Sequence record: MK250017.1
Length of the DNA stretch: 64,000 nt
Strand: one strand, 5' to 3'
Part shown: positions 1,554 through 45,860 of the stretch, piece by piece
Layout of the letters: each line of letters starts with the position of its first letter
Numbering within the stretch: the stretch's first letter is position 1
Translations under genes and position numbers: made by a program
Notes under the pieces: generated by a model
Databases searched by the model: none
Seen by the model: the letters and a program-made list of their open reading frames with translations, nothing else
What the model was told of the DNA's origin: nothing

Positions 1554-2897
1554 AAAGATATTGAAATTGATGGTTGTATAGTATGTCATTCTATTGAAGA
1601 TGCTATCAGTTATTCAAAAGAAATTAAAATGGATTCTGCATTCATTATTGGTGGTGGATCTATTTATAAAGAAGCAATTAACAAAGATCTTATTGATATT
1701 TTATATATTGATTTTTTAAATACAGGTTTATCTGATGAAGATTTTGATACTTATTTTGAATTTCCTCCTGTTGAACAAACATATCGTACATGTAAAAACT
1801 TAACTGATTATAATTCAAACGCAAATATTAATCCTGTTATTTCATACAGAGAACGTACATTTGTTACAACTGATTATGATTATTTGTCATTAATGAATAA
1901 AATTATTAAAAATGGAAAAACAAAACATACACGTGCAGGTGAAACATTATCTATTTTTGGTGAAATGCTTTCATTTGATTTAAGGAAAGGTTTGCCTATT
2001 CTCACAACAAAGAAAGTGTATTCAAAAGGTTGTATTCATGAATTGTTATGGATTTTACATGGTGATACAAATATAAAGTATCTTGTTGAAAATAATACTC
2101 ATATATGGGATGATGATGCATACAGATATTATTTACAGAAATTTGAATCTGATAAAGATGTAAAGACGACAAAAGAACAGTTTATTAACCGTGTAATTAA
2201 ACAGGATATTATTCATTATGTTGAAGATGGTGATATGAATAGCNNNNNNNNNNNNNNNNNNNNNCTTGGACCTGTATATGGAAAACAATGGGTTAATTGG
2301 AATGGTATTAATCAGGTTAAAGAACTTATTCATAAATTGAAAACAAATCCTGATGACAGACGTTTAATGATTTCTGCATGGAATGTCGGAGAAATTAAAG
2401 ATATGGCTTTACCTCCTTGTCATTACTTATCACAATGGTATGTAACTGAAATGAATAACTATGAAAGAAATGAAGAATATCATAAAAGATATAATATCAA
2501 TGTAGATGATAATAAACTTTTATCTGATGAAGAATTAGATAAATTAGGAATTCCGCATCAATATTTAAGCTGTATGTGGATGCAGAGATCTGTTGATACA
2601 TGTTTAGGATTACCATATGATTTATTGAGTTATTCTATATTAACTCATCTTATTGCACAGATTTGTAATATGGTTCCTTATGAAGTTAAATGTTCACTTG
2701 GTGATTGTCATATATATAAGAACCAGTTATCTGGTGCAATTAAACAAATTCAGAGAAATCCGTTTAAATATGAACCTGCACAACTTGTGCTTAATAAAGA
2801 AATTAGAGATATTAATGATTTTAAATATGATGATATTAAAATTGTAAATTATAATTCATATTCAACAGTTAAATATCCTCTTTCTGTTGGACTTTAA
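1554..2897 (+). CDS. thyA: Bifunctional dihydrofolate reductase-thymidylate synthase (start hidden in N gap 1347-1553)
   Basis: Frame is open upstream of the 1629 ATG (KDIEIDGCIVCHSIEDAI), then DHFR motif FIIGGGSIY; TS motifs FDLRKGLPILTTKKV, LGPVYGKQW, catalytic LPPCH, QRSVD. Confidence 0.9.
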   Translation, partial: KDIEIDGCIVCHSIEDAISYSKEIKMDSAFIIGGGSIYKEAINKDLIDILYIDFLNTGLSDEDFDTYFEFPPVEQTYRTCKNLTDYNSNANINPVISYRERTFVTTDYDYLSLMNKIIKNGKTKHTRAGETLSIFGEMLSFDLRKGLPILTTKKVYSKGCIHELLWILHGDTNIKYLVENNTHIWDDDAYRYYLQKFESDKDVKTTKEQFINRVIKQDIIHYVEDGDMNSXXXXXXXLGPVYGKQWVNWNGINQVKELIHKLKTNPDDRRLMISAWNVGEIKDMALPPCHYLSQWYVTEMNNYERNEEYHKRYNINVDDNKLLSDEELDKLGIPHQYLSCMWMQRSVDTCLGLPYDLLSYSILTHLIAQICNMVPYEVKCSLGDCHIYKNQLSGAIKQIQRNPFKYEPAQLVLNKEIRDINDFKYDDIKIVNYNSYSTVKYPLSVGL

Positions 2898-2903
2898 AAA
2901 AAT

Positions 2904-2937
2904 AAAGGTTGAAACATTCCAAAATGTTTCAACCTTT
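2904..2937. terminator. Perfect 15-bp hairpin between convergent genes (bidirectional terminator; possibly also a DGR target hairpin)
   Basis: aaaggttgaaacatt-ccaa-aatgtttcaaccttt. Confidence 0.75.
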
Positions 2938-2953
2938 TATATTTAAATATATA

Positions 2954-3847
2954 TTATACTTCTAAAGCTAAGAAACCTAAAGCACCGAGCTCGTAGTTCT
3001 TATTCTAGGTGGTGACCTGACCAGAATAGAAACTGACATAGTACTCATTATAACTCTAATACTAACTCTACCACTCTCTACTACTCCAATACTAGAAGTG
3101 ATCGAAACCTCTACCTTTTATAGCATTACGCTTTTCATTTATAGCTGCTTTATTTGCATAAATCTGATATAATTCACCTGGCATTGGTAAATACCAGTCA
3201 CCTGGTTTTGTACCAGGTGTTGAATAAACAACACAACAACATGCAGGTGCACAATAACCTTTACCTTTATTACTTGTCACACCATCACATATATTCTAAT
3301 CCTAATTTGTAGCATTAGATAAACATTGTTGTGTATTCCATTTACCTCCTATATATGATGCCTTATCTTCACTACCTTTTACATTACCTATTATTGTACC
3401 GTAATTACCAAAGTACATAACGTGATAAGCTTTATTTCCAGTTGTAGGTGTATCATAATCCATGTAATTTAAAGAAACGAATCTAGCTGTTTTAACAGCA
3501 CCTGTTGAATCATCGCCATTTTTAAAGTTTTCAGTAACCTCAGGAATTACACAAATAGCAATAGGTGTGTTATCAACACTATTAGTCTACGCATCAAGTG
3601 TAAGTTTACCATCAGCGGTTGAATAAAGAATATCTGCAACAGCAGGTTTCTTTTTACTAGATGAAGCATCCAATTTAACTGGTTCCATATTTACTGAACC
3701 TAACATCAAACAATTAGGTCCAGGATGTCTTTCATCTATAAATTTAGTCGTCTAAGACTGATATACAAATGCACCATCTTTATGATGAATCTATAAAGCA
3801 GCTTCATTCATTAATTCATCTGTTGCAAACTATTTAATGAATTTCAT
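2954..3847 (-). CDS. TAG-recoded C-type-lectin/DUF1566-like receptor-binding protein, probable DGR target (297 aa)
   Basis: ATG 3847 to TAA 2954 with 11 in-frame TAG; motifs TPIAICVIP, WYLPMPGELYQIYANK, YWSS.E, V.F.SG.V...K typical of Bacteroidetes-phage DGR targets. Confidence 0.8.
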
Positions 3848-3989
3848 AAATAATATAATTTTTTATTATATTTATACTGACAATTACTAACTTTTATGGA
3901 ATCTTATAACTTTATAAACATAACTAAATAGATATTTCATAATTAAGTTATATTTTCATAAAAACTTAAATAATTTTATCAATTTTCTA

Positions 3990-27123: not shown

Positions 27124-27278
27124 ATAATAAATTCAATAAATTAATAAACTAATAAATTATGAAATTTTTATTTTTTATATTTTTTATGTACATTATTATA
27201 AAGTTATTTAATAACAATAATAATAATTCAAATTTAAGTTTAAATTAAATGAGTATACTATTTTAAATAAAGCACATT

Positions 27279-45360: not shown

Positions 45361-45860
45361 TAATGATGAAAAGTCTGCACTTAACAAAATATAAAAAACA
45401 TTTTAATGTACTGTTGATTATATGTTTTAATTTTGTTAAATAAGAGATTATTGTAAATTATAGAAATTTACAAATCGAGGGGAACGCATAACGGCAATTA
45501 TGTTAGTACTTGGCGTTTAATGAAATGAATATGTATATTTGCCGATATGCATATGAGTGACATTAAATGATAAAATTATAATAGTGTAGCGGTTCGCACG
45601 CCCGTTGGTAAAACGGGAAGGGTTTATGTTTGAAAGCATATTAGGGGTTCGACTCCCGCTTATAAACAATTAAATTACATAATGTTCTCACGAAGAGCGA
45701 GCATCGGAAGGTGAGCAATTTAGAAAGATGTTTAAGAGTGATCATATTAAATTGATTTCTAACAGAAATACGGTGACGTAGGAGCTGAAAAAGAACAAAC
45801 GTATGGTAATGTTAGCATTATGTATTTAAAAAATATTAGTCCTCACAGACTTTACATTTT
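45361..45860 (+). ncRNA. Candidate large ornate ncRNA with kissing loop and embedded cloverleaf
   Basis: Closing helix aaagtctg/cagacttt plus aatg/catt; at least 8 internal stems; loop-loop cggcaa/ttgccg; terminator follows. Confidence 0.6.
45575..45667 (+). tRNA. Degenerate class-II tRNA-like cloverleaf, Tyr(GTA) by loop centre
   Basis: Acceptor ttataa/ttataa, D arm gtgt/gcac, cccgt-tggtaaa-acggg, long variable arm, T loop ttcgact with only 3-bp stem. Confidence 0.45.

What the first reader, a model, noticed from the sequence alone, without database searches (positions are those of the whole stretch)
2981..3109. Probable DGR variable repeat that exploits TAG recoding (NNG codons, 5 TAG in 43 codons)
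Seen: the last ~50 codons of the recoded C-type-lectin-like gene read GFDHF*YWSSREW*S*Y*SYNEYYVSFYSGQVTT*NKNYELGA (*=TAG). Of the 43 codons, only 1 ends in A, 12 end in G (5 TAG, 3 GAG, 2 TGG, CAG, AAG) and 12 end in C, unlike the A/T-ending bias of the rest of the gene. Established: DGR targets carry a C-terminal VR copied from a template with A-to-N mutagenesis. Templates favour AAC/AAT codons, which reach 15 amino acids and never a stop. Inference: this template also uses AAG-type codons. These would create amber stops in code 11 but are stop-free in code 15, and they add exactly the missing K, E, Q, M and W. Recoding would thus widen DGR diversification to all 20 residues. No TR or RT is visible in this window, so the target would be remote.
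Basis: partly seen in the sequence, partly recalled or inferred. Interest (0 to 1): 0.9.

Follow-up and report, generated by a model that had tools for sequence, protein, structure and literature searches.

The report
Orphan, decaying DGR variable repeat
The odd stretch is a genuine hypermutation-target repeat at the end of a lectin-like gene of the Prevotella megaphage Lak-A1, but this phage has lost the mutating machinery, and the extra TAG codons look like later ordinary mutations, not a recoding-adapted template.

Summary
On the minus strand, 2981-3109 holds 43 codons with 5 TAG. Third letters are T18/C12/G12/A1, and GC3 is 56% against 15% in the rest of the gene (p=3e-8).

The window is the last 64 kb of Prevotella phage Lak-A1, which reads TAG as Gln. 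The gene (2954-3847, 297 aa) belongs to a multi-copy DUF1566/Lcl_C-like family. Its C-terminus carries a clear DGR variable-repeat signature across more than 100 relatives.

I inferred the template from that variation and found it, with zero mismatches, in a 553,716-bp Lak-like genome. There it sits in an accessory ORF-TR-RT cassette serving six or seven VRs. VRs next to that cassette differ from the TR at 16-26 of about 55 adenines and at only 0-5 of about 75 other bases.

Lak-A1 itself has no RT, no TR and no copy of the accessory ORF. The same holds for all 15 GenBank Lak genomes.

All nine recovered TRs use AAC/AAT at every variable codon. The only AAG encodes the conserved Lys.

The window's VR differs from the TR at 12 non-adenine sites, including third-position C/T to G changes, and holds a 12-nt tandem duplication. 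It is an orphan, drifting VR. The "AAG template exploiting code 15" idea is not supported.

The parts
2954..3847 (-). Target gene: 297 codons plus TAA, with 11 in-frame TAG read as Gln. Member of a multi-copy Lak-phage DUF1566/Lcl_C-like family.
   Evidence: ORF and translation. Lcl_C hit at residues 216-284, E=5e-5, below cut-off. 1095 relatives found. A second copy in Lak-A1 lies at MK250017 352734-353627 and has 0 TAG. TAG alternates with CAA/CAG at conserved Gln columns.
2965..3112 (-). Variable repeat (VR): the stretch homologous to the Lak-clade template repeat.
   Evidence: 69% identity to the G002 TR. The alignment shows 22 of 55 adenine sites changed, 12 of 78 non-adenine sites changed, and one 12-nt insertion.
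2965..2980 (-). Conserved 3' block TTAGGTTTCTTAGCTT, shared by every VR and by the TR. Homology ends here, so it is IMH-like.
   Evidence: the block is identical in the window, in the VRs of DGR-positive genomes and in all nine TRs. After it the TR reads ACTAA and the VRs read TAGAAG.
3047..3070 (-). 12-nt tandem duplication (TAGAGTTAGTAT / TAGAGTTATAAT) that is absent from the TR. It holds three of the five VR TAG codons.
   Evidence: The exact 8-mer TAGAGTTA occurs twice, 12 nt apart. The aligner places a 12-nt gap against the TR. The insertion is shared with P0002 and P0010.
3092..3094 (-). TAG codon 252. The TR codon here is AAT, so the third-position T>G is a non-adenine change.
   Evidence: The nearest relative, P0002, has TTG here.
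3005..3007 (-). TAG codon 281. The TR codon here is AAC, so the third-position C>G is a non-adenine change.
   Evidence: Other family members have TAC, AAC or GAC in this column.
2904..2937 (.). 15-bp perfect hairpin, 17 nt after the stop codon, between the two convergent genes. It is a terminator and possibly the hairpin that DGR targets need beside the VR.
   Evidence: Fold energy -15.7 kcal/mol, z=-5.8. A strong hairpin follows every VR of the family.

Best explanation
The stretch is the variable repeat of a diversity-generating retroelement (DGR) target, but an orphan one. The 297-aa protein ends in a DUF1566/Lcl_C-type ligand-binding domain. In Lak-like megaphages that carry the cassette (a 131-aa accessory ORF, a 140-nt template repeat and a 676-aa reverse transcriptase), that end is rewritten by mutagenic retrohoming. 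The template's roughly 21 AAC/AAT codons are copied with random bases at the adenines. Lak-A1 has no cassette, so its VR is no longer overwritten from a template. (Inferred:) it has since changed by ordinary mutation. The changes are 12 substitutions at non-adenine sites, including C/T to G at third positions, and a 12-nt tandem duplication. TAG means Gln in this phage, whereas TAA and TGA remain stops. For the Tyr-rich VR codons (TAY), a third-position change to G is therefore the only one that alters the residue without ending the protein. That makes TAG the expected outcome. Recoding makes these changes tolerable, but it is not used by a template.
For: The window matches Lak-A1 records at 100%. 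At family level, 21 columns have about 3 bits of entropy dominated by Y, N, S, D and G, interleaved with invariant YWSSRE..EY.V.L..G.I....K.....VLGFLALEV. About 96% of residues in those columns are reachable from AAY. I inferred the TR from the variable columns and found it with 0 mismatches in G002, beside an RT (RVT_1 31.6 bits, PHROG reverse transcriptase 2e-64, YVDD and GxxxSQ motifs). VRs in DGR-positive genomes differ from the TR at 16-24 of 55 adenine sites and 0-2 of 78 other sites; the weakest G002 copy shows 26 and 5. The G002 ortholog of this very gene, with the same DHFR-TS neighbour and the same hairpin, has 17/55 and 2/78. The window has 22/55 and 12/78 plus the insertion. Lak-A1 has no RT, accessory ORF or TR, and no GenBank Lak genome has an RT. 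All nine Lak-B genomes keep a relic of about 150 nt from the 5' end of the accessory ORF, which shows the cassette has been lost in this clade. TR third positions are C20, T18, A5, G4. Four Lak-A1 assemblies are identical across 2900-3900.
Against: The order of events (DGR writing first, then loss, then drift) is inferred, not observed. An unsampled TR variant in the Lak-A lineage cannot be excluded. All six third-position changes in variable codons go to G, which is more uniform than mutation in an AT-rich genome would predict. I explain it by the stop-codon constraint and by selection for new residues, and neither was tested. The other Lak-A1 copy (352 kb) has an almost pristine VR (2 of 78 non-adenine changes) although the genome has no cassette. 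So loss was recent, or VRs are exchanged or rewritten in trans. Reads from the Lak-A1 source samples could not be examined.
Confidence: 0.75

Rival explanations
1. One reading: an active DGR whose template carries AAG-type codons at variable positions. Adenine mutagenesis would then yield NNG codons, including TAG, which are harmless under code 15, widening diversification to all 20 residues.
For: 12 of 43 codons end in G, 5 of them TAG. DGRs do occur in TAG-recoded phages. The Lak RT gene itself holds 4 in-frame TAG.
Against: No TR or RT exists in Lak-A1 or in any of the 15 GenBank Lak genomes. Nine TRs from three RT clusters have only AAY at variable codons. The single TR AAG column is K in 116 of 120 relatives and never Q. 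VR pairs within G002 show no third-position differences. P0010 shares the insertion yet has T- or C-ending codons where the window has TAG, TGG and CAG. A hypothetical AAG-type TR pattern gave no hit in IMG/VR or JGI contigs, which is a weak negative.
Confidence: 0.03
2. The window's VR descends from a different, now lost or unsampled TR variant of the Lak-A lineage, one with the 12-nt insertion and some G-ending codons. In that case many 'non-adenine' differences reflect the template rather than drift.
For: The insertion and several departures are shared by three lineages that otherwise differ: the window, P0002 and P0010. TRs do vary a little between RT clusters (L043 differs at three codons). 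VRs with 3-nt indels exist even in DGR-positive genomes.
Against: TRs are nearly invariant across RTs as far apart as 82% identity. The window and P0010 disagree in third positions at most of the G-ending codons, which a common template would not allow. No such TR turned up in any collection searched.
Confidence: 0.12
3. The VR is still rewritten in trans by the cassette of a co-infecting DGR-positive Lak phage. Its 5' homology, 3' IMH-like block and hairpin are all intact.
For: The 3' block is identical to that of active VRs and a hairpin follows it. DGR components can act in trans (Wu et al. 2018). The Lak-A1 paralog at 352 kb matches the TR at all but 2 non-adenine sites.
Against: A homing event would overwrite the 12 non-adenine differences and the 12-nt insertion, yet these persist in the window, P0002 and P0010. 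Four Lak-A1 assemblies are identical here.
Confidence: 0.05
4. No DGR was ever involved: the end of the gene is hypervariable only through positive selection and recombination among paralogs.
For: There are indels among VRs and mosaic patterns; for example C1_493k and P0016 share a VR but differ elsewhere. Between the window and P0002, 6 of the 10 differences cluster in 62 nt and are not all at adenines.
Against: Third positions are fixed and first and second positions fully variable in about 21 columns. A matching TR beside an RT exists, and mismatches are adenine-specific (24/55 against 0/78 in L025).
Confidence: 0.02

Closest known systems
DGR targets with DUF1566/DUF823/Fib_succ_major-type VRs ('category d', CLec2; exemplified by Legionella LdtA) in Wu et al. 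2018 (PMC5758913)
   Same: The VR sits at the C-terminus, carries the YWSS...K motif and gives a weak Pfam DUF1566 match. The template is rich in AAC/AAT, with adenines at codon positions 1 and 2. Codon-sized indels lie next to AAC runs. One TR serves several targets.
   Different: This copy has no TR or RT in its own genome and has 12 non-adenine departures. The host is a 540-kb TAG-recoded megaphage. In the DGR-positive relative, targets lie up to about 350 kb from the RT inside one phage genome, a layout Wu et al. did not expect for phage DGRs.
Silent or degenerate DGR cassettes and frozen VRs in TAG-recoded gut phages (Zeta crAss-like phages, PMC12386605; infant-gut recoded phages, bioRxiv 10.1101/2023.08.07.552389)
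   Same: These are recoded phages with in-frame TAG in the RT and a C-type-lectin-like target. Some VR/TR pairs carry about 10 non-adenine substitutions on top of the adenine changes and are read as formerly active. One study observed RT loss followed by a static VR.
   Different: In those phages a TR, and usually an RT or a remnant of one, remains in the same genome. Lak-A1 has nothing left, and the template had to be recovered from a related phage.
Bordetella phage BPP-1 Mtd/Brt/Avd, the founding DGR (established knowledge; cited through)
   Same: The cassette order is accessory gene, TR, RT. Mutagenesis is adenine-specific. The VR lies at the 3' end of a receptor-binding gene, followed by a conserved 3' block and a hairpin.
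   Different: BPP-1 has one adjacent target and an Mtd-type CLec domain. The Lak cassette serves six or seven dispersed DUF1566-type targets. Its RT has a C-terminal extension of about 250-300 aa of unknown function. Its 131-aa accessory ORF gave no Avd (PF05635) match.

Membership tests
Active DGR system (VR with a cognate TR and RT) | A reverse transcriptase of the DGR clade in the same genome | tested here: not met
   PF00078 gave no hit at E<=10 in the whole of MK250017.1. The Lak-type DGR RT protein gave no hit in Lak-A1, C1, A2 or B7. The RT DNA is absent from all 15 GenBank Lak genomes. The same queries do find the RT in G002.
Active DGR system (VR with a cognate TR and RT) | A non-coding template repeat in the same genome that differs from the VR only at adenines | tested here: not met
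   The VR against whole Lak-A1 finds only the paralogous gene end at 352734-353012. The G002 TR against Lak-A1 finds only the two VRs. The inferred-TR pattern gave 0 hits in Lak-A1.
DGR variable repeat (by descent) | Homology to a bona fide TR, with mismatches concentrated at TR adenines | tested here: inconclusive
   The window VR has 22 of 55 adenine sites changed against 12 of 78 other sites, so it is enriched (40% against 15%) but not exclusive, and it carries a 12-nt insertion. Sister VRs show 16-24 of 55 against 0-2 of 78.
DGR variable repeat (by descent) | Variable codons with a fixed third base and free first and second bases across relatives | tested here: met
   This holds for the family. 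Pairs within G002 give 12/12/0 and 13/8/0 differences by codon position, against 19/9/48 in the rest of the gene. The window copy departs from the rule at 7-12 third positions.
DGR variable repeat (by descent) | A conserved 3' boundary block (IMH-like) and a nearby hairpin | tested here: met
   TTAGGTTTCTTAGCTT is identical in the TR and in all VRs, and homology ends there. A 15-bp hairpin lies at 2904-2937, z=-5.8. Function in homing was not tested.
DGR variable repeat (by descent) | Variation between or within populations confined to the VR in otherwise identical genomes | tested here: inconclusive
   Four Lak-A1 assemblies are identical. The nearest variant, P0002, has 6 of its 10 differences within 62 nt of the VR. 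Wastewater contigs replace 2980-3073 with other sequence but come from other strains. Reads from the source samples were not available.
Pfam PF07603 Lcl_C / DUF1566 (C-type-lectin-like fold) | A score above the curated threshold, or a confirmed fold | tested here: inconclusive
   The score is 23.9 bits against a cut-off of 34.9. 43 of 46 relatives hit below threshold. PDB profile hits 8q4e and 4eps are weak (E about 0.07) but align the DW.LP..EL...YWSS motif. The AlphaFold2 model has pLDDT 34.
Genetic code 15 (TAG = Gln) | In-frame TAG at conserved Gln positions, and an intact ORF only if TAG is read through | tested here: met
   TAG alternates with CAA/CAG in columns 87, 173, 174, 182 and 228. 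The ORF has 297 codons without TAA or TGA. Devoto et al. 2019 report code 15, a CTA-anticodon suppressor tRNA and RF2 for Lak phages. No suppressor tRNA lies in this window.

The most novel reading that the evidence does not exclude
Lak-A-lineage phages have, or recently had, a TR variant of their own that carries the 12-nt insertion and G-ending codons. It could be supplied from an unsampled relative or a co-infecting phage, so part of the NNG/TAG pattern would be template-encoded and viable only under code 15. A milder version: cassette-less Lak phages keep their orphan VRs current in trans or by recombination with DGR-positive relatives, as the near-pristine 352-kb paralog hints.
Probability: 0.08. 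Interest if true: 0.7.

Novelty: new member of a known kind. Interest (0 to 1): 0.4.

Why it matters
The headline idea, that stop-codon recoding lets a DGR reach all 20 amino acids, is not what happens here. It should not be carried forward.

What remains is useful at a smaller scale.

- **A DGR in Lak megaphages.** Some Lak-like megaphages carry a DGR that diversifies a six- to seven-member family of DUF1566-type proteins. These are presumably host-binding proteins. The copies are spread over about 520 kb of one phage genome.
- **Why it may have gone unreported.** The 15 curated GenBank Lak genomes all lack the cassette. I found no paper in the searched library that describes a Lak DGR.
- **A natural before-and-after comparison.** Lak-A1 keeps two orphan VRs, one nearly pristine and one drifting. 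This shows what happens to a VR once its template is gone, and how a changed genetic code alters which point mutations a Tyr-rich VR can tolerate.
- **A gap in annotation.** DGR scanners that require an RT will miss such targets.

Tried and rejected
- **Direct TR search in the window.** blastn with word size 7 found no near-copy of the VR in the unmasked window. Short VR matches elsewhere in Lak-A1 (MK250017 418190-418214 and 463500-463531) looked like possible TR pieces. The first lies inside a 737-aa structural-type ORF and was dropped as chance. The second was not examined, but later TR-based searches of the whole genome did not return it.
- **Avd family search.** PF05635 gave nothing, even for the G002 accessory ORF. 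The 131-aa ORF is called Avd-like from its position only.
- **IMG/VR protein scans.** These found few loci: 5 for the target and 1 for the RT. ENA and Logan contigs, reached through the look-up of encoding contigs, were more productive.
- **Pattern scans.** The TR-specific 3' junction occurs only in G002. A hypothetical AAG-type TR gave 0 hits. These collections hold few Lak phages, so the negatives are weak.
- **Reads.** Only wastewater and animal runs kept as contigs were offered. The best hold no more than 27% of the sampled words. They have zero depth at 3002-3069 and jump from 2980 to 3073. That shows other VR variants in related phages but says nothing about Lak-A1's own population.
- **Structure.** AlphaFold2 on a 46-sequence alignment failed (pLDDT 34), so no fold search was run.
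- I did not resend it anywhere.
- **Nearest IMG/VR record.** G001 is only 76% complete. It has no RT and only a degenerate VR.
- **Masked stretches.** I did not fill or look up any N run. Loci L002, L013 and L038, fetched automatically by the genome search, overlap masked parts of the window and were never read or used.

Full report
**1. What is at the coordinates**

The minus strand of window 2954-3847 is a 297-codon ORF if TAG is read as an amino acid; it holds 11 TAG. It translates exactly as written. It has 5 TAG in 43 codons and third positions T18/C12/G12/A1. The rest of the gene has T128/A88/G26/C12. GC3 is 56% against 15% (p=3e-8), and TAG is enriched at p=0.012.

**2. Where the window comes from, and the code**

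The region is 100% identical to four records of Prevotella phage Lak-A1. The coordinates place the window at the last 64 kb of MK250017.1 (541,724 bp). Devoto et al. 2019 showed that Lak phages read TAG as Gln (code 15), with a CTA-anticodon suppressor tRNA and RF2. Within this gene family, TAG alternates with CAA/CAG at conserved Gln columns. The code is therefore shown by the genome, not assumed.

**3. No TR or RT in Lak-A1**

- A sensitive blastn of the VR against the unmasked window found nothing.
- Against the whole Lak-A1 record, the only real match is the 3' end of a paralogous gene at 352,734-353,627. That gene is 299 aa with no TAG.
- RVT_1 (PF00078) and the Avd family PF05635 gave no hit at E<=10 in Lak-A1. 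RVT_1 also gave none in Lak-C1, A2 or B7.

**4. The family still carries a clear DGR signature**

The protein has 1095 relatives in metagenomes. In an alignment of 120 of them, 21 columns of the last 50 residues have about 3 bits of entropy. Those columns are dominated by Y, N, S, D and G. They are interleaved with nearly invariant columns: YWSSRE..SS..EY.V.L..G.I....K.....VLGFLALEV. About 96% of the residues in the variable columns are ones reachable from AAC/AAT.

At the DNA level, each variable column keeps a fixed third base (C or T) while the first two bases vary freely. Glu268 (GAG) varies only to G, V and A, which are changes at its adenine.

**5. Finding the template**

From those columns I wrote the expected template segment (CTC AAY AAY GGT AAC ATC AAY AAY AAY AAY AAG) and searched five Lak genomes. 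It hit once, with no mismatch, in G002. G002 is IMGVR_UViG_3300045988_166570, 553,716 bp. This appears to be the Lak-A1-like genome of the same length described by Nayfach et al. 2021.

The locus has three parts:
- a 131-aa accessory ORF;
- a 140-nt non-coding TR;
- a 676-aa RT, 50 nt downstream of the TR, with YVDD and IGNLTSQ motifs and 4 in-frame TAG.

The RT scores RVT_1 31.6 bits (cut-off 29.6) and PHROG reverse transcriptase at 2e-64. It is about 45% identical to thousands of ordinary RVT_1 reverse transcriptases of about 400-450 aa, probably the general DGR type. A target gene converges on the RT.

G002 holds six or seven VRs: at about 7, 8, 133, 218, 357 and 529 kb.

| VR source | Adenine sites changed | Non-adenine sites changed |
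|---|---|---|
| VRs beside or near a cassette (G002 and four other contigs) | 16-24 of 55 | 0-2 of 78 |
| Weakest G002 copy (218 kb) | 26 of 54 | 5 of 72 |
| L025 (adjacent target in G002) | 24 of 55 | 0 of 78 |

They are the defining pattern of mutagenic retrohoming.

**6. What the template is made of**

I recovered nine TRs from three RT clusters of 82-98% identity, from human and pig gut contigs. They are almost identical. Every variable codon is AAC or AAT. The only AAG is the conserved Lys. That column is K in 116 of 120 relatives, and never Q. TR third positions are C20, T18, A5, G4. That alone explains why the VR is C/T-ending and A-poor in a genome whose genes otherwise end codons in A or T.

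**7. How the window's copy differs**

Against the TR, the window VR has 22 of 55 adenine sites changed. It also has 12 of 78 non-adenine sites changed and a 12-nt insertion.

- **G-ending codons.** Four of the 12 are the template's own: TGG, two GAG and AAG. The other eight are not template codons. Six of them differ from the TR by a third-position C or T to G change in a variable codon. The rest involve the TCA codon and the insertion.
- **The insertion.** It is a tandem duplication (TAGAGTTAGTAT / TAGAGTTATAAT; the exact 8-mer occurs twice, 12 nt apart). This multiplies the TAG count.
- **The orthologous gene in G002.** It has the same DHFR-TS neighbour and the same downstream hairpin. Its VR is clean, at 17/55 and 2/78.
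- **Codon-position pattern.** VR pairs within G002 differ 12/12/0 and 13/8/0 by codon position. Comparisons that involve the window show 7-12 third-position differences.
- **P0010.** It shares the insertion, yet has T- or C-ending codons where the window has TAG, TGG and CAG. These codons are therefore not columns of a common template.

**8. Absence of the cassette is general**

- The G002 RT protein, the accessory ORF and the whole 4.4-kb cassette DNA have no counterpart in Lak-A1 beyond the VRs and an unrelated intergenic repeat.
- None of the 15 GenBank Lak genomes has the RT.
- All nine Lak-B genomes keep a relic of about 150 nt covering the first 40 or so codons of the accessory ORF (E=5e-14). 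This shows the cassette was lost in at least that branch.
- The nearest IMG/VR record, G001, also lacks the RT but is only 76% complete.

**9. Variation data**

- Four Lak-A1 assemblies are identical across 2900-3900.
- The closest metagenomic variant, P0002 (98% identical), differs at 10 nt. Six of these lie within 62 nt of the VR, and they are not all adenine-type changes. That fits selection on binding residues rather than wholesale re-templating.
- The only runs served were wastewater and animal contigs. They lose the window's VR core entirely and bridge 2980 to 3073 with other sequence. This is the community-level hypervariability expected of the family. Lak-A1's own reads were not available.

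**10. Interpretation**

Shown:
- The stretch is homologous to a bona fide DGR template.
- The family is diversified by adenine mutagenesis in relatives that carry the cassette.
- Lak-A1 has no cassette.
- The window's G-ending and TAG codons depart from the template at sites DGRs do not mutate.

Inferred:
- The VR was written by a DGR in an ancestor or was obtained by recombination, and has since drifted.
- TAG is the favoured outcome because, under code 15, TAY to TAG is the only third-position change in a Tyr codon that alters the residue without making a stop. TAA remains a stop, as does TGA for TGY codons. Tyr is also the commonest residue in these columns.

A lost Lak-A-specific template variant remains possible (about 0.1). 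Rewriting in trans is unlikely for this copy. It is an open question for the near-pristine 352-kb paralog.

**11. Comparison with what is known**

DUF1566-type VRs are Wu et al.'s category d, also called CLec2. That survey also describes AAC-rich templates, slippage indels beside AAC runs, and single TRs serving several targets. DGRs in TAG-recoded gut phages, silent cassettes with extra non-adenine substitutions, and VRs frozen after RT loss have all been reported.

The searched library holds no description of a Lak megaphage DGR. Iyer et al. 2021 reported finding no RT-diversified C-type-lectin (FGS) domains in jumbo phages.

The finding is a new member of a known kind.

Noticed in passing
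L032 (G002:353570-357979); VRs at G002 ~6911, 8059, 133586, 218006, 357219, 529120: A Lak-like megaphage carries a complete DGR (accessory ORF, TR, RT) serving six or seven dispersed targets, some more than 100 kb and up to about 350 kb from the RT within one phage genome. Wu et al. 2018 expected remote targets only for non-phage DGRs. I found no paper that describes a Lak DGR.
   Followed up: partly
L032:1501-3531 (RT, 676 aa): The Lak RT has a C-terminal extension of about 250-300 aa that the related RTs of about 400-450 aa lack (they cover only about 55% of the query). The extension has no Pfam match. The RT also has 4 in-frame TAG, so it can be made only when TAG is suppressed.
   Followed up: no
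MK250017.1 352734-353627 (L003/L018) versus window 2954-3847: The two Lak-A1 paralogs differ sharply in TAG use: 0 against 11 in-frame TAG (3.7% of codons, the highest density among the window's ORFs). The TAG-free copy has an almost pristine VR (2 of 78 non-adenine changes). This may reflect different expression timing or different age.
   Followed up: partly
MK250026.1 496150-496306, and the same place in Lak-B1 to B9: A relic of about 150 nt from the 5' end of the cassette's accessory ORF (67% identity over its first 40 residues, 53-aa open frame) survives in all nine Lak-B genomes, with no TR or RT beside it.
   Followed up: partly
L032:316-613; Lak-A1 at 128724-129024, 243467-243571, 421258-421397; several sites in Lak-C1 and Lak-B7: An intergenic element of about 300 nt upstream of the accessory ORF is repeated at several places in every Lak genome (75-86% identity). 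It may be related to the highly expressed intergenic regions reported by Devoto et al.
   Followed up: no
MK250029.1 (Lak-C1) ~284.2-285.7 kb (L021/L022): Two family modules, each with its own VR, are fused in one 679-aa ORF behind an unrelated N-terminal region of about 200 aa.
   Followed up: no
L023 (G002:132553-134028): In one VR the conserved Trp codon of the YWSS motif is TAG (a TGG>TAG change at a non-adenine site). It would be a stop under code 11 and is Gln under code 15. A 293-aa product from a 553,716-bp contig (P0006) matches this sequence.
   Followed up: no
L025, L044 and other VRs of DGR-positive contigs: One-codon insertions relative to the TR lie next to AAC runs. This is consistent with the RT template slippage described by Wu et al.
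   Followed up: no
window 45575-45667 (+): The only tRNA found in the window is a 93-nt tRNA-Tyr (GTA), which is long and may carry one of the introns reported for Lak tRNAs. No suppressor tRNA lies in this window.
   Followed up: no
window 1629-2897 (+): The convergent neighbour is a fused DHFR-thymidylate synthase gene (Pfam hits on the 516-aa ortholog in related contigs). It contains no TAG, and it shares the 2904-2937 hairpin as a bidirectional terminator. It contains masked stretches that I left untouched.
   Followed up: no
window 27127-27180: A 54-nt match (80% identity, E=4e-6) to the first codons of the G002 RT gene lies in an intergenic gap. It is AT-rich and probably chance.
   Followed up: no
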